A stretch of DNA of 63,916 nt, filler included, from Intoshia linei (Eukaryota; Animalia; Orthonectida): the NCBI GenBank assembly GCA_001642005.1. It is 5 parts of 5 records of this genome, joined end to end, with 100 filler letters (N's around TTAATTAATTAA, not from the genome) between each part and the next. Parts side by side here need not be neighbours in the genome. Positions count along the whole stretch, not along the records: positions 23,141 to 39,055 come from LWCA01000887.1; 4 more parts are not named here. One strand, written 5' to 3'. Of the stretch, positions 24,240-36,628 are shown piece by piece. Within the stretch, counting starts at the first letter, position 1. Every line of letters starts with the position of its first letter. The translations under genes and the position numbers were made by a program. Under the pieces are notes generated by a model. That model worked only from the letters and a program-made list of their open reading frames with translations, did no database searches and was not told the origin of the DNA.

Positions 24240-25711
24240 TTAATTTTTAAAAACCACATTTCAATTACAGTTTTTTTCAGGGATGTATAAGATAAATTTC
24301 AATCTCCCAATTTCACATCTTAAGAGTCAAAAACCCCTGTTGTCCCTCTTTTTCAAAATCAAACGAGTTGGAGAATTTAAAAAAATATATACGCTGATGC
24401 GGATTTTAAAATCATAAACATTATCATAAATTTAAATTTAAAAAAATTATATCTTCAGGGCCAAAACCACAAATTACCCTTCTTTTTTAATGAAAACAGC
24501 CCTAGAATTTCAAAAAATTTACAGGTGGTAGAGTTGTATCATGTTAACACACGTAAAAAAATTTCAATCCGAATAAGTGACGACTTCACGGTCAAAAAAG
24601 CATTTTAGTTCATATATTTTTTTCTGAAATATTTTATTAAAACAAAAAATGTGAATAATTTACAGGTCCGAAAATTAAAAAAAAAAATTATTCTGATAGA
24701 ACTTATTCCAGTTGATATAAATATTTTTTTTTTGAAATATTTTATTAAAACAAAAAATGTGAAATAATTAACGGTCCGTAAAAAAAGATTATTCTGATAG
24801 AGCTATTCCAGTTGATATAAATACAAAAGTTCAACTCGAGAAATCTGCGCATTCCCGATTAAAAATAATTTTTAATATATTATTAACCAATATTTTGATT
24901 AAAATAAAAATTTAAAATGTAAATATTTATCCTACAATTTCAAAAAAATGTGCATTGAACGTCTACACATTTCCAATAAAGAAATATGGGTGGAAATCTA
25001 TATAATTTATTCCTTCGAAATTTTTTATAATCTTCAAATTTTAACACTACAGCAACGAATTTATAAAATTAAATTTATATTAACTGAAACCTTATTTTTT
25101 TTATTGATAATTGTCAACAAATTTAACATAAAATGGTAATAAAAAATGTAACATTTACAAGAAAAAAGGCCAAAAGTATGGACAAATTTTTAACATCAAT
25201 TATTTTTATATTACAATCCTTTACAATAATGGTAAAATTCGACTGAAATATTTATAAAGTGAAAATTCAATTAATTATTTATACACAATTGGTATTATTA
25301 AGTATTTATTAAATTGATACTGAATATGTCATCACATTGAAAATGACAAAATATATTTTTATAATTTTATTTTTTTTGAAATTTATGCTATTTATGACAA
25401 TTTTTAGGATAGGACTGTTTTTAATTTATTTTTAATATTATACACACATTCTGTCTAATAAATTAAAAAGTTTTAACTTTATTTTTAATATTATACACAC
25501 ATTCTGTCTAATAAATTAAAAAAATGGGATAATAATTGTTTATAAATTATTTACGCAAATTTTAACAAAACAAAGGATTGATTATTATAATAGTTAATAG
25601 TAGAATTTTTAAGTTAGATTTTTAACGTGAATTTATTTTTATGGTATAATAAAAGAGTGCCCTCGGCAGAGCTAGGTGCTCTTTGTACGTAGTACAAAAC
25701 TGCCAAGCTAG
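24240..25711 (+). mobile_element. Helitron copy with internal tandem duplications
   Basis: 3' end tttgtac-gta-gtacaaa...caagCTAG|t; duplicated segments near 24610-24830 and 25415-25520. Confidence 0.75.
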
Positions 25712-26888: not shown

Positions 26889-27629
26889 ATTAAAATTGCA
26901 GCTTTCGATTAATTATATAATAATGGTCTTTGAATCAAGTTTTTTTTTTTCATCTAGTATATTCTGCTGTAAGATCTTTATCTTATGATATGCATGGTCA
27001 AATCTTCAAAATGACTCGTTTTGAAATAAGTGGGATATAGGCAAAATCTTTATGTTTTATTAAATTGATACCACTGGGATAAAAAAACCAAAAAATTTTT
27101 TTCATTTTTATCTGACTGGCCGACAGTTGCTCTCTACGCCCTGGGGGCACACTAACAATACTATACAAAATTTCGGGAATACCAAGAAAAAAACATACAG
27201 AAATATTTTCCAGCTAAATTCCGTAAATTTCAGATATTGACACTTTAAAAATTTTTACAATAAGCCCCTTATAACACCTTATAATTTATAACTAGGGGAA
27301 ATCATTTTTAACCTATAAAATCAACAAAATATAATCTATCAAAATAAAATTTTAACCTTTTTAACCTCTAAAAAATACATTAAAATTTCCATTTGGTCCC
27401 CCCTGTTAAAAATTTTTTTTTAAACATAATTTAAAAAATTAAATATTAAGATTTGTTATGGTACAATATTAAATATATAACTTGTATAAGGTACGTCTAC
27501 CGAGGCAAAAAGTTCTACTATGTCAATGGCAAAATCACTTTTTAATTTGCAATATTTACGAATTGGAGTAATATCATTCAAAGTTAATATGTGTTTAACA
27601 GACGAGTTTGGAAATTTAGGCATTAACTG

Positions 27630-27825
27630 TGTACAGTAATGATCATATCATTATACTAAACGTTAACCAAAACAGTTACCATTGTAAATATTGTTATTAA
27701 CTGAACATAAAGTTCGTTAATATTAATATAAAACTTATTGTATACATTTATTATCGTAATCAGAAACATAATTTGTATTTACTGATTAAATATTAAACTG
27801 ATTAAACATCTTCATTATCACTACA
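27630..27825 (+). repeat. 5' LTR
   Basis: Direct repeat of 30884-31086, ending ...attatcactaCA. Confidence 0.9.
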
Positions 27826-27838
27826 AAATACAAATTAT
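27826..27838 (+). promoter_or_regulatory. Non-tRNA, self-complementary primer-binding site candidate
   Basis: aaatacaaattat is the perfect reverse complement of LTR 27768-27780 (ataatttgtattt); no TGG follows the LTR. Confidence 0.65.
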
Positions 27839-30800
27839 ATAATTTAATATTCATGGCGAATATAATTGATAAACCTACGGAAATATTTGGTCCCGATGGC
27901 AAATTACAAGTAAAAATTAATGATTGGATTTTAAATTATATTGCAAATTCATTACAATTGAAGTCGCTGAAGAGTCAATGATATAAATGATGCTCAATTT
28001 CATTGGTGATCGTGCACGAATTCGTTTAAATCGCCTTGGGGTTTAACAGAACCTTTCAGATATGATAGAAGAGATATGTAAATGGGAGGAATGCTATGGA
28101 TGTGGAAAACATCGTGTTAATAGAAAATATGATTGCCACGCACGGTCGCATAAGTGTAGCACTGGGTCTACTATAAATTTATTCGGTATTTTACATGTGG
28201 ATATACCTGACCTGTGTCAATCTCTAAAGTTTTACGTAACTAATGGTATTAACATTATAGGATGTAGCACCGTGATGAATGCAGGTCTTACAAAAAGTTG
28301 GAAACAAATTTAAGTTTGTTAATAAATTTAATTCAATTAATCGTGTTGAGGTTTATTCTCTTAATTCAGAATATGAACTTATTGTTAATCGGTTTAGTAA
28401 AGTATTTAGCGATGTGCTAGGTAAAATTAGTAAATATGAACATAATATGCAATTATTGAATGAAAATATGAGATATAAGGGTCCTATTTATCCCACACTT
28501 TTAAATCTCAGGAAATTTGAAATGAATCTAATAAATGATATCATAAAACCTGTTGATCATTTGAATGACCCTTGCACATATTGGAGGTCTCCAAAATTTT
28601 TTGTCCCTAAAATTGGTAACCAATTCAGGATGGTATTTGATTTTAAGAAATTGAATGAACAAACAAAAAAAGATACTTATCCAGCACCTAGCTTGCAGTC
28701 CTGTTTAGATCATCTAGCTGAAAATAAAATGTTCACAACACTGGATCTTGTATCAGGGTTCCACCAAATTTTTACTGAAACCGACTGATCGTAATAAAAC
28801 AGTCTTCTCTTCAGGGTATGGAAATAAATTATATCGCTTCAAACGCATGCCATTCGGATTATGTAACGCGCCTACAACATTTCAGCGTGTTATGGAAGAT
28901 ATACTAAATAATATACATTCAGTGATTGTTTATATGGATAATATTATTATAGGTTCTAAGAATCATGCTGACCACATACGAAATGTGACACAAGTTTTAA
29001 CCAGATTAGAAAAATTCGGTGCTACTATCAAACCTTCAAAATGTAATATTGGACAAACTGAAATTTACATTTAGGGTCACCTAATTAATGGCAGTGGCAT
29101 TCATTCTGATCCCAATAAAATCAATTCAATTTTAAACATACCATCTCCTACTTCAAAGAAAGAGCTAAAATCATTCTTGGGAATGACCAATTACCATCCC
29201 CGTTTTATAAATAACTATGCCTACATCGTCCATCCATTTGAAAAATTAACCACCTCACTTAAATATGAATGGACTCAGACATGCGATCACTTATTTAAAA
29301 CTCTCAAAACTTGCTTAACTTCAGCACCTGTTTTAACCTTACCGTTATCTGATCAAGAATTCATTTTAGAAACGGACCATATGAGGATCCACCATTAGCC
29401 TCCCAGACAGGAATTGGCGCTGTTTTACGACAGAATGATAAAGTTATAGAATATGCTAGTACTTCCTTTAAAGGTGCCCAACTTCGTTATAGTACTGTTG
29501 TCAAAGAATTTTATGCCGTTTTATGGAGCGTCGAAAAATTCAAACATTATTTATATGGTCGGAAATTCATTGTTATAACCGATCATAATCCACTTACCCA
29601 CTTACGAAAGTCTACTAAACTAACTAATCGTCTACACAGATGGGTTGAACGTTTGGAAATATTTGATTTTGATATAAAATATCGTCTCGGTAAATTAAAT
29701 GTGACAGCTGATGTTCTATCTAGATTAACCTCAGATATCATGGTGAATTCTAGTCACTAAGAAACCCTTTGACATTTATCAACATCAAAAATCTGATCCT
29801 CATATTACATCAATAAAGGAATATAGTGATATTAAATTTCTTCCAAAATCGAACCTTTATGACTATTATCGCAACCACATTACTATAAGCGACGATATCG
29901 TTTATTTTAAAAAAATAACGCCTCCTATCCGATCGTTCCACAGTCACTTACTTCCTCAGCAATCAATTTTTTTCATAATAATCTGTCACCCAGGAGTTTC
30001 TAAACTATACAAGATCATTCATCAGAAATATTTTTGGCCTAAACAGCACAATGATATTCGACAATTTACGGCAAAATGTACCATGTGTAACGTAAATAAA
30101 CATCGAAAATTTACCCCTGAAAAGAAATTGCAACCTGTAGTTAGAGATAAGTTCAATAGTCTTTGGCAAATCGATATATTAGGGCCTTTACCCATATCAT
30201 CTAATGATAAAAAATATATCGTAGCTATGATAAATAATTTTACAGGGTGGTAAGAAGCAAATGCTATTCATGACATAACCGCAGAAACGGTGTGTGAATC
30301 TATTATGAAGAATATTATATCACGGTATGGACCACCGCAGGAAATTCATACTGATAGAGGTCAATAGTTTGAAAGTCAAATAATGAAAGAATTATGCAAA
30401 TCATTGCATATTCATAAAACAGAATCAAAGCCGTATAAGCATAATCAAAATGGTATGATTGAACGTATGAATCGCACTTTACGAGAAAAACTAAGAATAT
30501 GTACTAACAATAAATTATATATTGGAATACACATTTAACTAAGATATTGATGTCCATGAAATTTTTACCTAATGAAAGGAATAATGCATCACTTCTGTCT
30601 CTTGTCTTTGGTTATCATAACATTTTATCAAATAATTCAAAATTTAATAATGATAAGAAAAATTGTATAACCAGATCACTAAATTATAGAAATAATTATT
30701 TGAAGCGTCTTCAGCGGAATTACAACAATAAAATACCTAAATCGGGTTTTAACCATCAAAATTTTTTTGTGCCAAATTTACCTATTAAAACTAAAAACCT

Positions 30801-30883
30801 CTTTATAAACGTAAATCTCAACCAAATAAACGTTATATTGATTATCACTTATACTAGTAATGTCTATAACTTAAATAGGGAGG

Positions 30884-31086
30884 TGTAATGACAATATCAT
30901 ACTAAACTTTAACCAAAACAGTTACCATTGTAAATATTGTTATTAACTGAACATGAAGTTGAGGTACTGAAGTTCGTTAATATCAATATAAACCTTATTG
31001 TATGCATTTATTGTCGTAATCAGAAACATAATTTGTATTTTACTGATTAAATATTAAACTGATTAAACATCTTCATTATCACTACA
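30884..31086 (+). repeat. 3' LTR
   Basis: Preceded by the PPT; imperfect terminal inverted repeat tgtaatgacaat / attatcactaca; followed by the TSD aactg. Confidence 0.9.
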
Positions 31087-32928
31087 AACTGATTATTAGA
31101 TTAAAATTTGATTAAGATTCAGATTTGTAAAATTTAAAAACAATGCACATGTAAATAATTGAATATTTCAAAATCTAACTTTATTAACTTTTAAAAAAAT
31201 TTTAACTTTTCTAACCGTATTAACTTTATAAAATTTTAATTAGCCAATTAATATTGACGATATTGGTGCCATCATGCTGGACATATCAAATTTTAACTTT
31301 TCTGACTTTTGCTTGCCGTAGTTATAACACATTTTAGCTTATTTAAAATTGTTATGAATCTTCTCTCAAATAAAATTTAAATTAATTAAATTATAACACA
31401 ATGTAAATTCTAGCTCAAATTCGTACCGTGTGAATAAAATATGACAATAGATAACTACTCACAATAATTAAGTTGACTTAGTTTGTAACATCTCGACAGA
31501 AAATAAAAAAATAAACAGTACTGTATTTTGACAGTATTTAGTGTTAATTACAATGACGATATCTCATTTGTAATACGATTAACTTTAAAAGTTCAATTTA
31601 TTTGTCCCAGTAACAGTAATTTAATAAATAAAGACTAAACAATAAAATTCGCAAACTAGAAAGTGCAAAAATTCACGGTTAAAATGCACTAAATGAACTT
31701 GCAAGATTTATATGGGTTTTAAAAATGAAAAATAGTTATTGAGGTATGTTATTTACAAATCAAAAGTTAATGTGAAATTATTTAAACAGTCTGTTGTAAA
31801 ATGTGTCTGAAACATTGTTTTGTATTGTTATATAATTGAAAAGTGCTAGTTGTGCCTCATTTCAAGTAGACAGAGTAAATATTACATAATCGTATTATAC
31901 TTTGAATGAGAAACAAGGCTCGTAATATAGTCGTCAATCATTTTATTTGTAATTGAGATTGCCTATAAATTGCACACAGTCAGTGCAAATGAAAGAGAAT
32001 GTTACAATGAAAATATTAAAAATAAAAATTTGGAGACAGTTATTAGCTGTAATAAAATTAATGTTGGTTATTGTAAAACTATTATTCAGTCTAGTATTCA
32101 ATAAGTATATTAATATGTCTCGCACGTGATGAGCAAAATTCACTTGTAGTATTTATCAGTAACAAGCCGACATCATCACTTACATAAATGTGTGTTAGTC
32201 CAATAACTATTAAAATTGCACTATGCAAACCACAAAGTGGGAGACGTCTGTTCAAATATCGATCTCAACACTTCTATGTCAACTGTTATGATTCAAAAAA
32301 CTAATTATATAATTTGCCAATTTATTCACTCATCATGCAACCATTAAAGTTGATACCTTATCACAACCAAGAGCCTTTCAAGGTCAAGATTCTAAACAGA
32401 TATGCGAATTACTAGTAATTTTTTAAAAAGTTAGTATCACTGCTATTTCAAGTGTGAATCAAATGTGATGTATCGATTTCGGATTAATGTATCTATACAT
32501 ATTAGTTAACACAATTACGATACAATTTATTCAGTCCAGTAACAAATAGATTGCACTTTAAAATAAACTGTAACGTAGTGAATGTGATTGTTCATTTCTC
32601 CAAGATGAGACTGATTGTCTTTAATCAATTTTGTTTATTTGTTCCGAAATCTCTAATTTAGTTTCCTTTGCTTTATATTGACTACTTGAGCATTATTCGT
32701 ATCAGGCCGATGATTTTAATTAACAACATTGATACAATTTGTTTGCCGTCTGTCCTAGTAGATCAGTGATTATATAACTAAAATTGCATTATGGTAATTT
32801 AGTTTCAATTATTTTATTTGTACAATGTATCTGTTCATTTTTTTAATTTTAAACAGTATTTCCAAGATAAGTTGCACTGATTCACTAGCATTTATTTGAC
32901 CAATTTACATGTTATATTTTTAGATGAA

Positions 32929-35604
32929 ATGTCAAAATCTCTTGTGAATCAATCATTGGTTCCTCATGTGATGAATCACAATTCCAATCATGATTTTTCG
33001 CACAATGCCAATGTCTATTCAAAATATAATTACTCTAAAACAAATAATAGCCAATTAGCATTTACGCAGTTGCACAGTCCAAATAATTATCTTATTTCTC
33101 GGACACAAAATACACAATTTGATAATAATTATAATTATTGTGATGATATGTTAGCAACCTCTCAATTATCTCATTTGGCGCAAAATTCAAACAATTTAGT
33201 ACATTCGAATCTTTACACTCAATCTCAATACTCTACGGAAAACAGCAATAAAATGAATAAATACGAACAATTTGATCAATCCCTGCAAACCATGTTAAAG
33301 GTATATTAATTTGCATATAGTTGAATATATGAATACATTAAATTGTGAATTTTATGTGTATTATAAAAATAAAATTTTTTATTAATGATTGAATATTTTG
33401 ATGAAGCGATACAACCATGTATCCAGTGTTTTTTGAGTACATTGCACTTTACAATTTCCAATAAACTCGAAATTTACGCGTTGGGCCCATTTTTTAAAAC
33501 TTTTCGTTTTTTCATGACATTTCGCATTTTTAATGAAACCATTGGATACAAATTCATGTAACTAATGAAAAATGTAAAAGTTTTCAGATAACTCAGACAT
33601 GTTATACCTGCTGTACACTTGTTTTTGAGAACTAATTTTAATTTAAAATACCAAACTTGATTTTCATGTCAATAACAAAGTATTTATGATTTCTGCGTGA
33701 TAAGATATTGGGACTTGTCTGCTTAAATACACCAGGTAACACGGTCGTTTGCCAATATGTTGGTTCTGGTCGAAACTAGATCTGCTACTGATATCGATTA
33801 GTTAATGTATGCTAAAATAGACTTGATTTTTGAGAAATTATCGATTAATAGTTCTACACACCTTTGATATTCGTTACTTTCGAACATTGCGTTGGCTGGA
33901 ATTGGACTAATTGTTGAATTAGATGATATATCTTTTATTTTAAATTTGTAATTATTCTTTTAACATTATTTACATTGCTGATTTAATCCCTCACAATTAT
34001 TTCTTCACAACTCATAATGTGTATACATGTCACGTTTTTGTAATTGCGCCATTTTGACTTACATGTGTGGTATAAAATTTTTATAATTTTTTAAAAATTT
34101 AGAAATTTATGTTTATTTTTAGGATTTATACGTGATGACAAGTAAAGAAAAACCCAATTATAGTCGAGCTGTAACATATCACTTGAACGAAAGATTAGAC
34201 CAAAACATTGATATAGTTGGCAAAATGATAATGACCGATTATGATGTAAATGAAAAAAAGTGTAATTATGATCAATTTTTGGAAAATACCATGAATGACA
34301 TTGTAAATATTTCGAAATCAACGGCTTACAAACCAACCTATTTTGATGGTTCAATTTCTGTAAATAATCATGGTGACTATTCCAAGACGCTAAAAGACGA
34401 GGACAATTTACAAGCTCAATTAGGAAAAAAACGAAAAAATATTGGTCCGATATCAGATGTTCCACCTAAAACTGCAAAACACCCAGATTCAAATGAATCG
34501 TCAGGATATGGTAGTGGAGGTTTACCACATCATAAAAAGGATGCAAAATCTGTAATTATAAAACCAGAACCTAACATTCAAAAACAACAACCATTTGTTG
34601 GTAATGTAATTCGAGGCAACCTTAATTCTCCAAAAATAACAAATTCGTCATCTCGCTTGACCAACAGGAACCAATTGCAAGCATCCCAAATGAGATTACA
34701 ACATACTAGTATATGCCAAAACCACCTAAACACCACACCAAACCCTCAACTAAATCAAATTGAAGGTCAAAATATGCCTGCTGCAAGCACTTTAATACAA
34801 ATGGCAGAATCCTACAACAATATACCAATTGATAATCTACAAAGATTACAACATATTCAAAACTTGAAACTGCAAGCCCAAAACAGAGAACGAGCACAAT
34901 TTCAATCTCACTATAAAATGAATCCCTTCAACTCAACTACAAATTTAGGATATCCTAGTCTAGCCGATATTCAAAATAATACAAATTGTTTTACGCCGTC
35001 CAATCAAAATTATATTACCGACATGTACAATTCGAGACAACGGGAGAATGAATATAAAAAAATTTGTCAAGATCGCTTGAGAGGTTTCTGTCAAAATCAG
35101 AATGTCACCTCACATTTAGAACAACAACATGCCCGATCCAGAGTGACAACTGGTGCTATTCCAAGCAACATGATAAATTACGAAAATTTTTTGGCTCTAT
35201 CTCCTCAAACAGCTGGGCCAATGTACCAACGTATGATTATGGCTAGACAACGCGATAATAACGTGAGAGGCGTTCCCACAGAATCTATTCCTTCTACAAA
35301 TTATGATCCAGATATGCAAAGAATCTATAACCAGCAAATGCAATCTTATCAAATGGCATACCAGCAAAGCATGTCTCGCAACTCAAATTCAAACGCTCAT
35401 AGTCAGATGAACATTAATCAGCAGCAAATTCGACATAACCAAGAAATCAGAATTCGACAGTTACACTATCAAAATTCTTTATCTCGAATGAATGGCAACC
35501 TCTACGATAATGGAAATGGATCTCGAATGCCTGACATGAATCAATCTGAACAACACTATAATTTTATGCCGCCTCAAAATCAAAGAGCTCGATATTATCG
35601 TTGA
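32929..35604 (+). CDS. Q/N/M-rich low-complexity protein, possibly a Mastermind-like coactivator
   Basis: Exons 32929-33300 and 34123-35604 join in phase 0. The motif PAASTLIQMAE resembles the Mastermind-family PAAxxLKQMA motif. The gene is well supported; its identity is tentative. Confidence 0.6.
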
Positions 35605-35749: not shown

Positions 35750-36628
35750 ATATAGAGTAAAAGTAATTTAGTTTAAAATATGTCTGTTTTCCAGTTTATT
35801 CAAGAAAGTAAGACGAGTCGAGTAATATAAATTATATATTTGTATGACATTTTTTCCAAAGTCATGTTTCATCAGAAATTGAGTACTTCAAGATCAAAAC
35901 CCAAATTGTCTTTTTTAAAATTCAAACCCGTCCTAGAATTATAAGAAATAAACAATCTGATCATTTGAAGAATTTAAAATTATCAACATTATAATAATTT
36001 TCAATTTCAAAATCTTATATCTTCACGGCTATAACCCCAAATTACCCTTTTTTGTAAAAATGAAAAAAATGCTAGAATTTTATACAACATAAATTCTGGG
36101 ATAGTTTATTAAAATTATAAGCATTATCATAAATAGGAACAATATCAAAAAAAATTTATTTTCACTATCAAAACTCCAAATTATTTTTTTTTAAAAAATG
36201 AAAACAGCCCTATAATTTAAAAAAAGTTACAGATGATACAGTTATATCCAGTTAACACATGGAAAAATTTCAATTTTTTTAATCTGAAAAAGTGACGTCT
36301 TCAAGGTCAAAAAAGCAGTTTAATATTCATTTTTTTTATTTCGAAACTATTTTATTATAACAAAAAATTTCTTTGATATAGCTTATTCCAGTTGATATAA
36401 ATACAAAATTTCAACCCTAGAAATCTATGCATTCCCGGTAAAATTAAATATTCATACTACATATTTACAATTTCAAAAAAAATATAAATGTGAATTGTAA
36501 AATGTTTGGTAATAGTGAGATGCCTATATAATATTGAATTTAATCTAATTTTTTGATAATAAAATTAGAAAAGTCGCCCTCAGTAGAGCTAGGTACTGTT
36601 TGTACAAAGTACAAACCAGTCAAGCTAG
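35750..36628 (+). mobile_element. Helitron copy
   Basis: Family internal blocks; 3' end ctgtttgtac-aaa-gtacaaaccag-tcaagCTAG|t. Confidence 0.75.

What the first reader, a model, noticed from the sequence alone, without database searches (positions are those of the whole stretch)
27768..27838. Mag-like gypsy retrotransposon that appears to prime its own reverse transcription without a tRNA
Seen: the 5' LTR ends ...CACTACA at 27825. Where a tRNA PBS beginning TGG should follow, the sequence is AAATACAAATTAT (27826-27838). This is the exact 13-nt reverse complement of ATAATTTGTATTT inside the LTR (27768-27780). That motif is also kept in the 3' LTR and lies about 35-40 nt downstream of a TATAAAA at about 27727, close to where transcription should start. 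Established: S. pombe Tf1 and related Tf1/sushi-group elements self-prime; the first nucleotides of the transcript anneal to the PBS and are cleaved by RNase H to serve as primer. Inference: this element looks Mag-like (gag MLNFIG..A, Mag-type Cys/His knuckle, 5-bp TSD, no chromodomain seen) rather than a chromovirus. It may therefore represent self-priming in a separate invertebrate gypsy lineage. I cannot check the literature for earlier reports.
Basis: partly seen in the sequence, partly recalled or inferred. Interest (0 to 1): 0.85.

Follow-up and report, generated by a model that had tools for sequence, protein, structure and literature searches.

The report
Dead gypsy retrotransposon with self-complementary primer site
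A decayed Ty3/gypsy retrotransposon in an orthonectid (Intoshia) genome has, where a tRNA primer site should be, 13 bases that exactly complement its own LTR, so its ancestors probably primed reverse transcription Tf1-style with their own RNA; this rests on one dead copy.

Summary
The element runs 27630-31086, with LTRs of 196 and 203 nt, TG..CA ends, the 5-bp target duplication AACTG and the polypurine tract AAATAGGGAGG. Empty-site contigs in four public runs confirm these limits. The 13 bases directly after the 5' LTR (27826-27838) are the exact reverse complement of LTR bases 27768-27780. No TGG occurs within 28 nt of the LTR end. Such a match arises in about 2-4 of 10,000 shuffled or genomic controls. 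The geometry is that of Tf1-type self-priming: the motif lies after a TATA-like box and before three ATTAAA signals, and the complement starts exactly at the LTR edge.

The support is thin in other respects.
- This is the only copy found that carries a 5' LTR and leader.
- It is dead: gag and protease are largely deleted, there are frameshifts, and the RT box reads YMDN.
- Covariation and the transcription start could not be tested.
- "Mag-like" is not established. The element is a Ty3/gypsy with no chromodomain, and its RT-RNase H is at most 38% identical to any database protein placed in the tree, where it sits on a long unplaced branch.
- Self-priming has already been predicted outside Tf1/sushi, in Tcn1 and in plant copia TAR.

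Verdict: a probable new member of a known kind, of moderate interest.

The parts
27625..27629 (+). Target-site duplication AACTG, 5' copy
   Evidence: Same 5 bases at 31087-31091. The empty-site joint 27624->31087, with 5 shared letters, is seen in contigs of all four runs.
27630..27825 (+). 5' LTR (196 nt, TGT...ACA)
   Evidence: Aligned to the 3' LTR: 13 mismatches over 194 aligned positions, K2P about 0.07, plus 3-, 5-, 14- and 1-nt indels.
27727..27733 (+). TATA-like box (TATAAAA; TATAAAC in the other two LTRs)
   Evidence: Read directly and from the LTR alignment. Function is inferred.
27768..27780 (+). Putative self-primer ATAATTTGTATTT, near the presumed start of R
   Evidence: Exact complement of 27826-27838. 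Conserved in all three LTRs; two of them have one more T, which would add a 14th pair with A27825.
27785..27806 (+). Three ATTAAA polyadenylation-signal-like hexamers (27785-90, 27792-97, 27801-06)
   Evidence: Read directly. Their role as an R/U5 marker is inferred.
27826..27838 (+). Primer-binding site, complementary to the LTR and not to a tRNA 3' end
   Evidence: Starts at the first base after the LTR. There is no TGG for 28 nt. p is about 2-4e-4.
27843..27851 (+). Possible second duplex arm (TTTAATATT), pairing with LTR 27789-27797
   Evidence: A 9-nt perfect complement, shuffle p about 0.02. It would cross the central duplex. Weak evidence.
27853..28157 (+). Gag remnant: a 42-aa ORF, short fragments, and a non-canonical Cys/His stretch at 28092-28157
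   Evidence: ORF list, no Pfam hit. Only about 500 nt lie between the PBS and RT, so most of gag is missing.
28169..28197 (+). Site of a protease deletion
   Evidence: The second copy has 214 nt here (L001 10041-10254) that encode the DTG active-site region. The window has 29 nt.
28357..29377 (+). Reverse transcriptase, broken by a frameshift near 28786 and a stop near 29075; the catalytic box reads YMDN at 28931-28942
   Evidence: Pfam RVT_1 at 9e-20, tblastn to full-length pol proteins. The closest solved structure is Ty3 RT, 1e-15.
29371..29751 (+). RNase H domain (frame changes at both ends)
   Evidence: Pfam RT_RNaseH_2, tblastn.
29816..30885 (+). Integrase core and short C-terminal region, broken; no chromodomain
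   Evidence: rve_3 hit, tblastn 29816-30523. The 113-aa tail ORF 30547-30888 has no Pfam hit.
30873..30883 (+). Polypurine tract AAATAGGGAGG
   Evidence: Directly abuts the 3' LTR.
30884..31086 (+). 3' LTR (203 nt)
31087..31091 (+). Target-site duplication AACTG, 3' copy

Best explanation
This is a dead, internally deleted Ty3/gypsy LTR retrotransposon of an orthonectid (Intoshia; most likely I. linei). Its active ancestors probably started minus-strand DNA synthesis by Tf1-type self-priming. Inferred steps: transcription starts in the LTR shortly before or at 27768. The 13 (ancestrally perhaps 14) nt ATAATTTGTATTT(T) fold back onto the complementary PBS that begins at the first base after the LTR. 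RNase H cuts at the 3' end of the paired 5' segment. The freed 3'-OH, opposite 27826, is extended through U5 and R (27825 back to 27781). The roughly 45-nt strong-stop DNA then transfers to the 3' R. Plus-strand strong-stop synthesis copies the RNA primer, which can renew the PBS in each cycle and so keep the match exact. Shown: the element's limits, the absence of a tRNA-type PBS, and the exact complementarity with its position and improbability. Inferred: the transcript start, the cleavage and the priming.
For: Element limits are proved by the TSD and by empty-site contigs. The exact 13-nt complement starts at LTR+1, with p about 2-4e-4 in two kinds of control. It is the longest perfect inverted repeat nearby and dominates the predicted fold. 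No TGG occurs for 28 nt, the leader is AT-rich and unlike any tRNA end, and there is no Rfam or tRNA match. The motif lies after a TATA-like box and before three ATTAAA signals, where R should begin. It is identical in three LTRs, and the extra T in two of them would extend pairing to the last LTR base. The two complementary blocks are not in the order an inverted LTR fragment would give. This geometry is how self-priming is recognised in Tf1, Tj1, sushi and plant elements (PMC4600332, PMC10085805, PMC6317226). A broad RT neighbour from Osmia carries an ordinary TGG-type PBS 4 nt after its LTR, so the method does detect normal PBSs.
Against: There is one copy only, so no covariation is available. 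No RNA data exist. A start at the canonical distance from the TATA box (about 30 nt; my own knowledge) would lie some 6-10 nt upstream of the motif, whereas in Tf1 the primer is the very 5' end. The duplex is all A-U apart from one pair: the hairpin scores -8.4 kcal/mol with z -1.2 at 37 C, not better than shuffles. The extra duplexes that Tf1 needs are weak here: a 4-bp stem inside the loop and a 9-bp crossing duplex with p 0.02. The finding came from a scan of very many windows, so a 3-in-10,000 event has a look-elsewhere cost. The copy is rearranged in its 5' part, so a lost PBS cannot be excluded.
Confidence: 0.6

Rival explanations
1. Chance complementarity in AT-rich DNA. This decayed copy lost its true PBS along with most of gag, and the real primer of the family is unknown or was a tRNA.
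For: The genome is 20-34% GC, so AT-only words recur. The 5' part of the element is heavily deleted. The scan tested many windows. Matches of 9 nt or more arise in about 3% of shuffles.
Against: An exact match of 13 nt or more at the LTR edge arose in only 0.02-0.04% of controls. The 13-mer occurs nowhere else in the piece. It lies in the one part of the LTR where R should begin.
Confidence: 0.15
2. The pairing is a real RNA structure of the leader with another role, such as a U5-leader stem, packaging, dimerisation or translation control. Priming would then use some other RNA.
For: Retroviruses and Tf1 have functional U5/leader stems around the PBS (PMC10085805). A further 9-nt complement between LTR and leader exists.
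Against: Such stems flank a PBS. Here the 3' arm occupies the PBS position itself, and no other candidate PBS lies between the LTR and the first ATG 27 nt later.
Confidence: 0.15
3. A one-off rearrangement of this copy, such as snap-back synthesis or template switching during its last reverse transcription, created a short inverted copy of LTR sequence.
For: The copy has several internal deletions and LTR indels.
Against: The complement is a clean 13-mer flanked by unrelated sequence. The second complementary block lies in the wrong order for an inverted LTR fragment. The junction with the LTR end is intact.
Confidence: 0.05

Closest known systems
Tf1/Tf2 (S. pombe), Tj1 (S. japonicus) and the Tf1/sushi group of chromoviruses
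   Same: There is no tRNA PBS. The PBS directly after the 5' LTR is exactly complementary to a short LTR stretch downstream of the promoter, and the TSD is 5 bp. These features predict fold-back, an RNase H cut and self-priming (PMC4600332, PMC10085805).
   Different: The host is a protostome animal (an orthonectid). The integrase has no chromodomain. The LTRs are only about 200 nt. The duplex is 13-14 nt and almost pure A-U, against 11 nt in Tf1 (my own knowledge). The primer may not be the extreme 5' end of the RNA. The extra 'pretzel' duplexes are weak. Kinship of pol with Tf1/sushi could not be tested.
Plant lineages with predicted self-priming: Tcn1 chromoviruses and Ty1/copia TAR (Houba, Osr-1)
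   Same: Self-priming is inferred purely from LTR/PBS complementarity in lineages other than classical Tf1/sushi (PMC6317226).
   Different: They belong to different superfamilies or clades and to plant hosts. Those predictions rest on many copies, this one on a single copy.
Metazoan non-chromoviral Ty3/gypsy elements (Mag/SURL-type; proteins labelled 'K02A2.6-like')
   Same: The domain order is PR-RT-RH-IN with no chromodomain. The LTRs are short and end TGT..ACA, as listed for Mag A/C LTRs in PMC3601003. Some of the best database matches carry the K02A2.6-like label.
   Different: Identity is only 25-38% and there is no supported grouping in the tree. One broad neighbour checked (Osmia, L002) has a normal TGG-type PBS.
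Dictyostelid Skipper and GalEa-type copia elements (unconventional PBS regions)
   Same: These LTR elements also lack a TGG PBS, and their priming is unresolved (PMC5006619, PMC5445492).
   Different: They show no LTR complement of the post-LTR sequence. This element does.

Membership tests
Ty3/gypsy (Metaviridae) LTR retrotransposon | Direct LTRs with TG..CA ends, a target-site duplication and a polypurine tract | tested here: met
Ty3/gypsy (Metaviridae) LTR retrotransposon | pol order PR-RT-RNase H-IN, with RT closest to Ty3-type RTs | tested here: met
   Pfam, colinear tblastn, Ty3 RT as best PDB hit. PR survives only in the second copy.
Self-priming LTR retrotransposons (Tf1-type mechanism) | No PBS complementary to a tRNA 3' end next to the 5' LTR | tested here: met
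   No TGG occurs for 28 nt. The host's full tRNA set was not on hand; none is found in 49 kb of Intoshia DNA.
Self-priming LTR retrotransposons (Tf1-type mechanism) | [quoted passage not shown] | tested here: met
   13/13 complementary starting at LTR+1, p about 2-4e-4. That the stretch is the start of R is inferred from the TATA and ATTAAA positions only.
Self-priming LTR retrotransposons (Tf1-type mechanism) | The transcript 5' end coincides with the self-primer | not testable with these tools
   No RNA run holds the element.
Self-priming LTR retrotransposons (Tf1-type mechanism) | Additional duplexes around the PBS (the three-duplex 'pretzel' with a U5-IR-like stem) | tested here: inconclusive
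   There is only a 4-bp stem inside the loop and a crossing 9-bp duplex with p 0.02.
Self-priming LTR retrotransposons (Tf1-type mechanism) | Primer and PBS covary among family members | tested here: inconclusive
   Only one copy with a leader exists in four runs and in the protein libraries. The LTR motif is invariant in three LTRs.
Tf1/sushi group (chromoviruses) | Chromodomain at the integrase C-terminus | tested here: not met
   The tail ORF has no Pfam hit. Only about 116 codons lie between the IN core and the PPT. The copy is decayed, so this is not absolute.
Tf1/sushi group (chromoviruses) | pol groups with Tf1, sushi-ichi and relatives in an RT/RH/IN tree | not testable with these tools
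   No reference sequences could be fetched. A tree with 67 database hits left the element unplaced.
Mag clade of Ty3/gypsy | pol groups with Mag/SURL reference elements | not testable with these tools
   No references were available. The nearest proteins are at most 38% identical, some labelled K02A2.6-like.
Mag clade of Ty3/gypsy | Gag with a canonical CCHC knuckle of Mag type | tested here: inconclusive
   The Cys/His stretch at 28092-28157 does not fit CX2CX4HX4C. Gag is mostly deleted.

The most novel reading that the evidence does not exclude
A chromodomain-less Ty3/gypsy lineage of protostome animals (orthonectids), not descended from Tf1/sushi, evolved or retained self-primed reverse transcription. 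Self-priming would then be either ancestral or repeatedly invented across LTR retrotransposons, in animals as well as in fungi, vertebrates and plants.
Probability: 0.35. Interest if true: 0.6.

Novelty: new member of a known kind. Interest (0 to 1): 0.4.

Why it matters
Self-priming is the main known alternative to tRNA priming in LTR retroelements. It has been shown experimentally only for Tf1-type elements of fission yeasts. In the open literature I could search, its predicted range is Tf1/sushi, Tcn1 and plant copia TAR. A case in a chromodomain-less gypsy element of a spiralian parasite would widen that range. It would also bear on whether hairpin priming is ancestral to LTR elements, an idea raised in PMC3601003. 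The practical value is limited: the copy is dead, the family is nearly extinct in this genome, and the host cannot easily be worked with.

Tried and rejected
- Other copies with a leader: contigs of four runs hold only this one over 27751-28040, and the second organism holds nothing at least 80% alike there.
- The HMMER scan of 1.8 billion representatives gave one close hit, a gene model that swallowed a 5'-truncated copy. A word search with that region found only the same protein, and a search with the RT piece gave only hits of 50% identity or less.
- PBS type in relatives: Osmia (L002) has a TGG-type PBS. In Petrolisthes (L003) the LTR ends are unclear within a tandem array. Two Logan contigs (L004, L005) and two ENA loci (L006, L007) showed no usable LTR pair.
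- Clade placement: the RT-RH tree of 68 rows, with the window's pieces joined by X at each break, left Intoshia on a 1.33 branch with no supported partner. Source names, Pfam architectures of hits and the ESM Atlas gave no clade.
- tRNA and Rfam scans found nothing.
- Hairpin folding energy is not better than shuffles, so thermodynamics adds no support.
- An inverted LTR fragment was rejected from the order of the two complementary blocks.
- The TGGCGAAT at 27854 was rejected as a PBS: it lies 28 nt from the LTR, sits in the ATG context, and is followed by AT-rich sequence.
- The two classic Tf1 papers are not held in the library.

Full report
**What is there.** The piece is AT-rich (20-34% GC). 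It holds a 3,457-bp LTR element at 27630-31086. The LTRs are 27630-27825 (196 nt) and 30884-31086 (203 nt), and both start TGT and end ACA. AACTG flanks both ends (27625-27629 and 31087-31091). A polypurine tract, AAATAGGGAGG (30873-30883), abuts the 3' LTR. The limits are confirmed independently. Contigs of four public runs join 27624 directly to 31087 with five letters shared. This happens because the element sits inside a high-copy host repeat whose other copies are empty: flank depth is 160-520 against about 25 for the element. The two LTRs differ at 13 of 194 aligned positions (K2P about 0.07) plus four indels, so the insertion is old.

**Host.** A HMMER scan of 1.8 billion representative proteins gave one close hit (87% identity). 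It is OAF72214.1 of Intoshia linei, a Rap-GAP gene model whose first exons are a second copy of this element, 5'-truncated and internally deleted. Dispersed repeats of the piece recur in that I. linei contig. The window is therefore orthonectid DNA, most likely from I. linei. This is an inference: run names were coded and all four runs differ from the window at some sites.

**State of the copy.**
- RT, RNase H and integrase are present and colinear with full-length Ty3/gypsy pol proteins: 28357-29377, 29371-29751 and 29816-30523 plus a tail to 30885.
- They are broken by frameshifts and stops, and the RT catalytic box reads YMDN.
- Only about 500 nt lie between the leader and RT, so most of gag is gone.
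- The protease active-site region, kept in the second copy (L001 10041-10254, with a DTG motif), is deleted at 28169-28197.
- The integrase tail has no Pfam match and is too short to hold a chromodomain.
- The best solved relative of the RT is Ty3 RT.

**The observation.** The 13 bases that follow the 5' LTR (27826-27838) are the exact reverse complement of 27768-27780 within the LTR.
- This is the longest perfect inverted repeat in 27600-28100.
- The 13-mer occurs nowhere else in the window except the 3' LTR, and once in the LTR of the second copy.
- A complement of 13 nt or more starting 0-5 nt after the LTR arose in 0.04% of 20,000 LTR shuffles. At offset 0 it arose at 0.02% of 14,472 other positions of the piece.
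- Pairing stops on both sides (C27767/A27839 and A27781/A27825). Two of the three LTRs carry one more T after the motif, which would pair with A27825, the last LTR base, to give 14 bp.
- No TGG occurs for 28 nt. The first one lies in the ATG context of the first ORF and is followed by AT-rich sequence unlike any tRNA end.
- ARAGORN and Rfam find nothing in the element, the piece or the I. linei contig.

**Mechanism.** The arrangement is the one by which self-priming is recognised. [quoted passage not shown]
- Here the motif lies 41 nt after a TATA-like box (27727-27733) and just before three ATTAAA hexamers (27785-27806). This is where R should begin (read directly; function inferred).
- A cut after 27780 would leave a 3'-OH opposite 27826. 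Extension would copy 27825 back to 27781, and this short strong-stop DNA could transfer to the 3' R.
- Copying of the primer during plus-strand synthesis can renew the PBS and would explain an exact match.
- I rate this explanation at 0.6.

**Weak points.**
- One copy only. Contigs of four runs show a single contig path over 27751-28040, and the second organism holds nothing at least 80% alike there. Protein searches found no further copy. The LTR motif is invariant, so covariation cannot be judged.
- No RNA run holds the element.
- A start at the usual distance from the TATA box would lie about 6-10 nt before the motif, unlike Tf1, where the primer is the very 5' end.
- The duplex is almost pure A-U, and the fold is no better than shuffles at 37 C. 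The host is probably a cold-water animal (my own knowledge), which would stabilise the duplex.
- Tf1 needs two further duplexes, the 'pretzel' (PMC10085805). Here I find only a 4-bp stem inside the loop and a 9-bp LTR/leader complement at 27789-97 and 27843-51. The latter would cross the central duplex and has shuffle p 0.02.
- The finding comes from a very large scan, so some look-elsewhere cost applies.

**Rivals.**
- Chance, with loss of the true PBS (0.15).
- A leader structure with another role and an unknown primer (0.15). Against it: the 3' arm occupies the PBS position itself, and no other candidate lies before the first ATG.
- A one-off rearrangement (0.05). Against it: the two complementary blocks lie in the wrong order for an inverted LTR fragment.

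**Classification.** The element is a Ty3/gypsy element without a chromodomain. 'Mag-like' could not be tested because no reference sequences (Mag, SURL, Tf1, sushi) could be fetched with these tools.
The element sits on a 1.33 branch with no supported partner, and its highest identity is 38%.
- Some of the best hits are pseudoscorpion proteins labelled 'K02A2.6-like', and others come from plants or fungus-like contigs.
- The Cys/His stretch is not a canonical knuckle, and a 5-bp TSD does not discriminate.
- The short TGT..ACA LTRs agree with the Mag A/C LTR descriptions in PMC3601003 but are not exclusive to them.
- One broad neighbour (Osmia, L002) has an ordinary TGG-type PBS 4 nt after its LTR.

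**Novelty.** Self-priming is established for Tf1. It is predicted for the Tf1/sushi group from fungi to vertebrates, for Tcn1 chromoviruses and for the plant Ty1/copia TAR lineage (PMC4600332, PMC10085805, PMC6317226, PMC6934838). In the open-access library I found no report for a chromodomain-less gypsy element of an invertebrate, nor any paper on Intoshia retrotransposons. That library is incomplete. I therefore file this as a probable new member of a known kind, with moderate interest. The more novel reading, an independent non-chromoviral animal lineage, gets probability 0.35.

Noticed in passing
L001 10001-23141 (I. linei LWCA01000001.1): Gene model OAF72214.1 (1546 aa, Rap-GAP/RalGAP) begins with exons made from a dead copy of this retrotransposon (PR/RT piece, residues about 60-220). 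This is probably an annotation artefact.
   Followed up: partly
window 27450-27624 and 31087-31250: The LTR element is inserted in a high-copy host repeat: contig depth is 160-520 against about 25 for the element. Empty-site contigs occur in all four runs.
   Followed up: partly
window 24242-24948 and 35760-36452: A dispersed repeat family, 72-85% identical between the two window copies, has at least six further copies in the 33-kb I. linei locus L001.
   Followed up: no
window 25417-25522: A tandem duplication of a 53-nt unit, 96% identical.
   Followed up: no
window 29100-29403: Contigs in all four runs skip 302 nt here, with CTT in between, so other copies of the family carry an RT/RNase H deletion. 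The second organism shows 4-7 times the baseline depth over RT/IN, which indicates more copies there.
   Followed up: no
window 34132-35604: A long Q/N-rich ORF (490 aa), probably a host coding exon. It was not examined.
   Followed up: no
L003 5536-14631 (Petrolisthes manimaculis): A tandem LTR-internal-LTR-internal-LTR array of a gypsy element with 100% identical units.
   Followed up: no
window 27630-27645 vs 30884-30895: The 5' LTR carries 5 extra bases near its start (TGTACAGTAATGAT against TGTAATGA in the 3' LTR and in the second copy). The 3' LTR carries a 14-nt insertion after 30943.
   Followed up: partly
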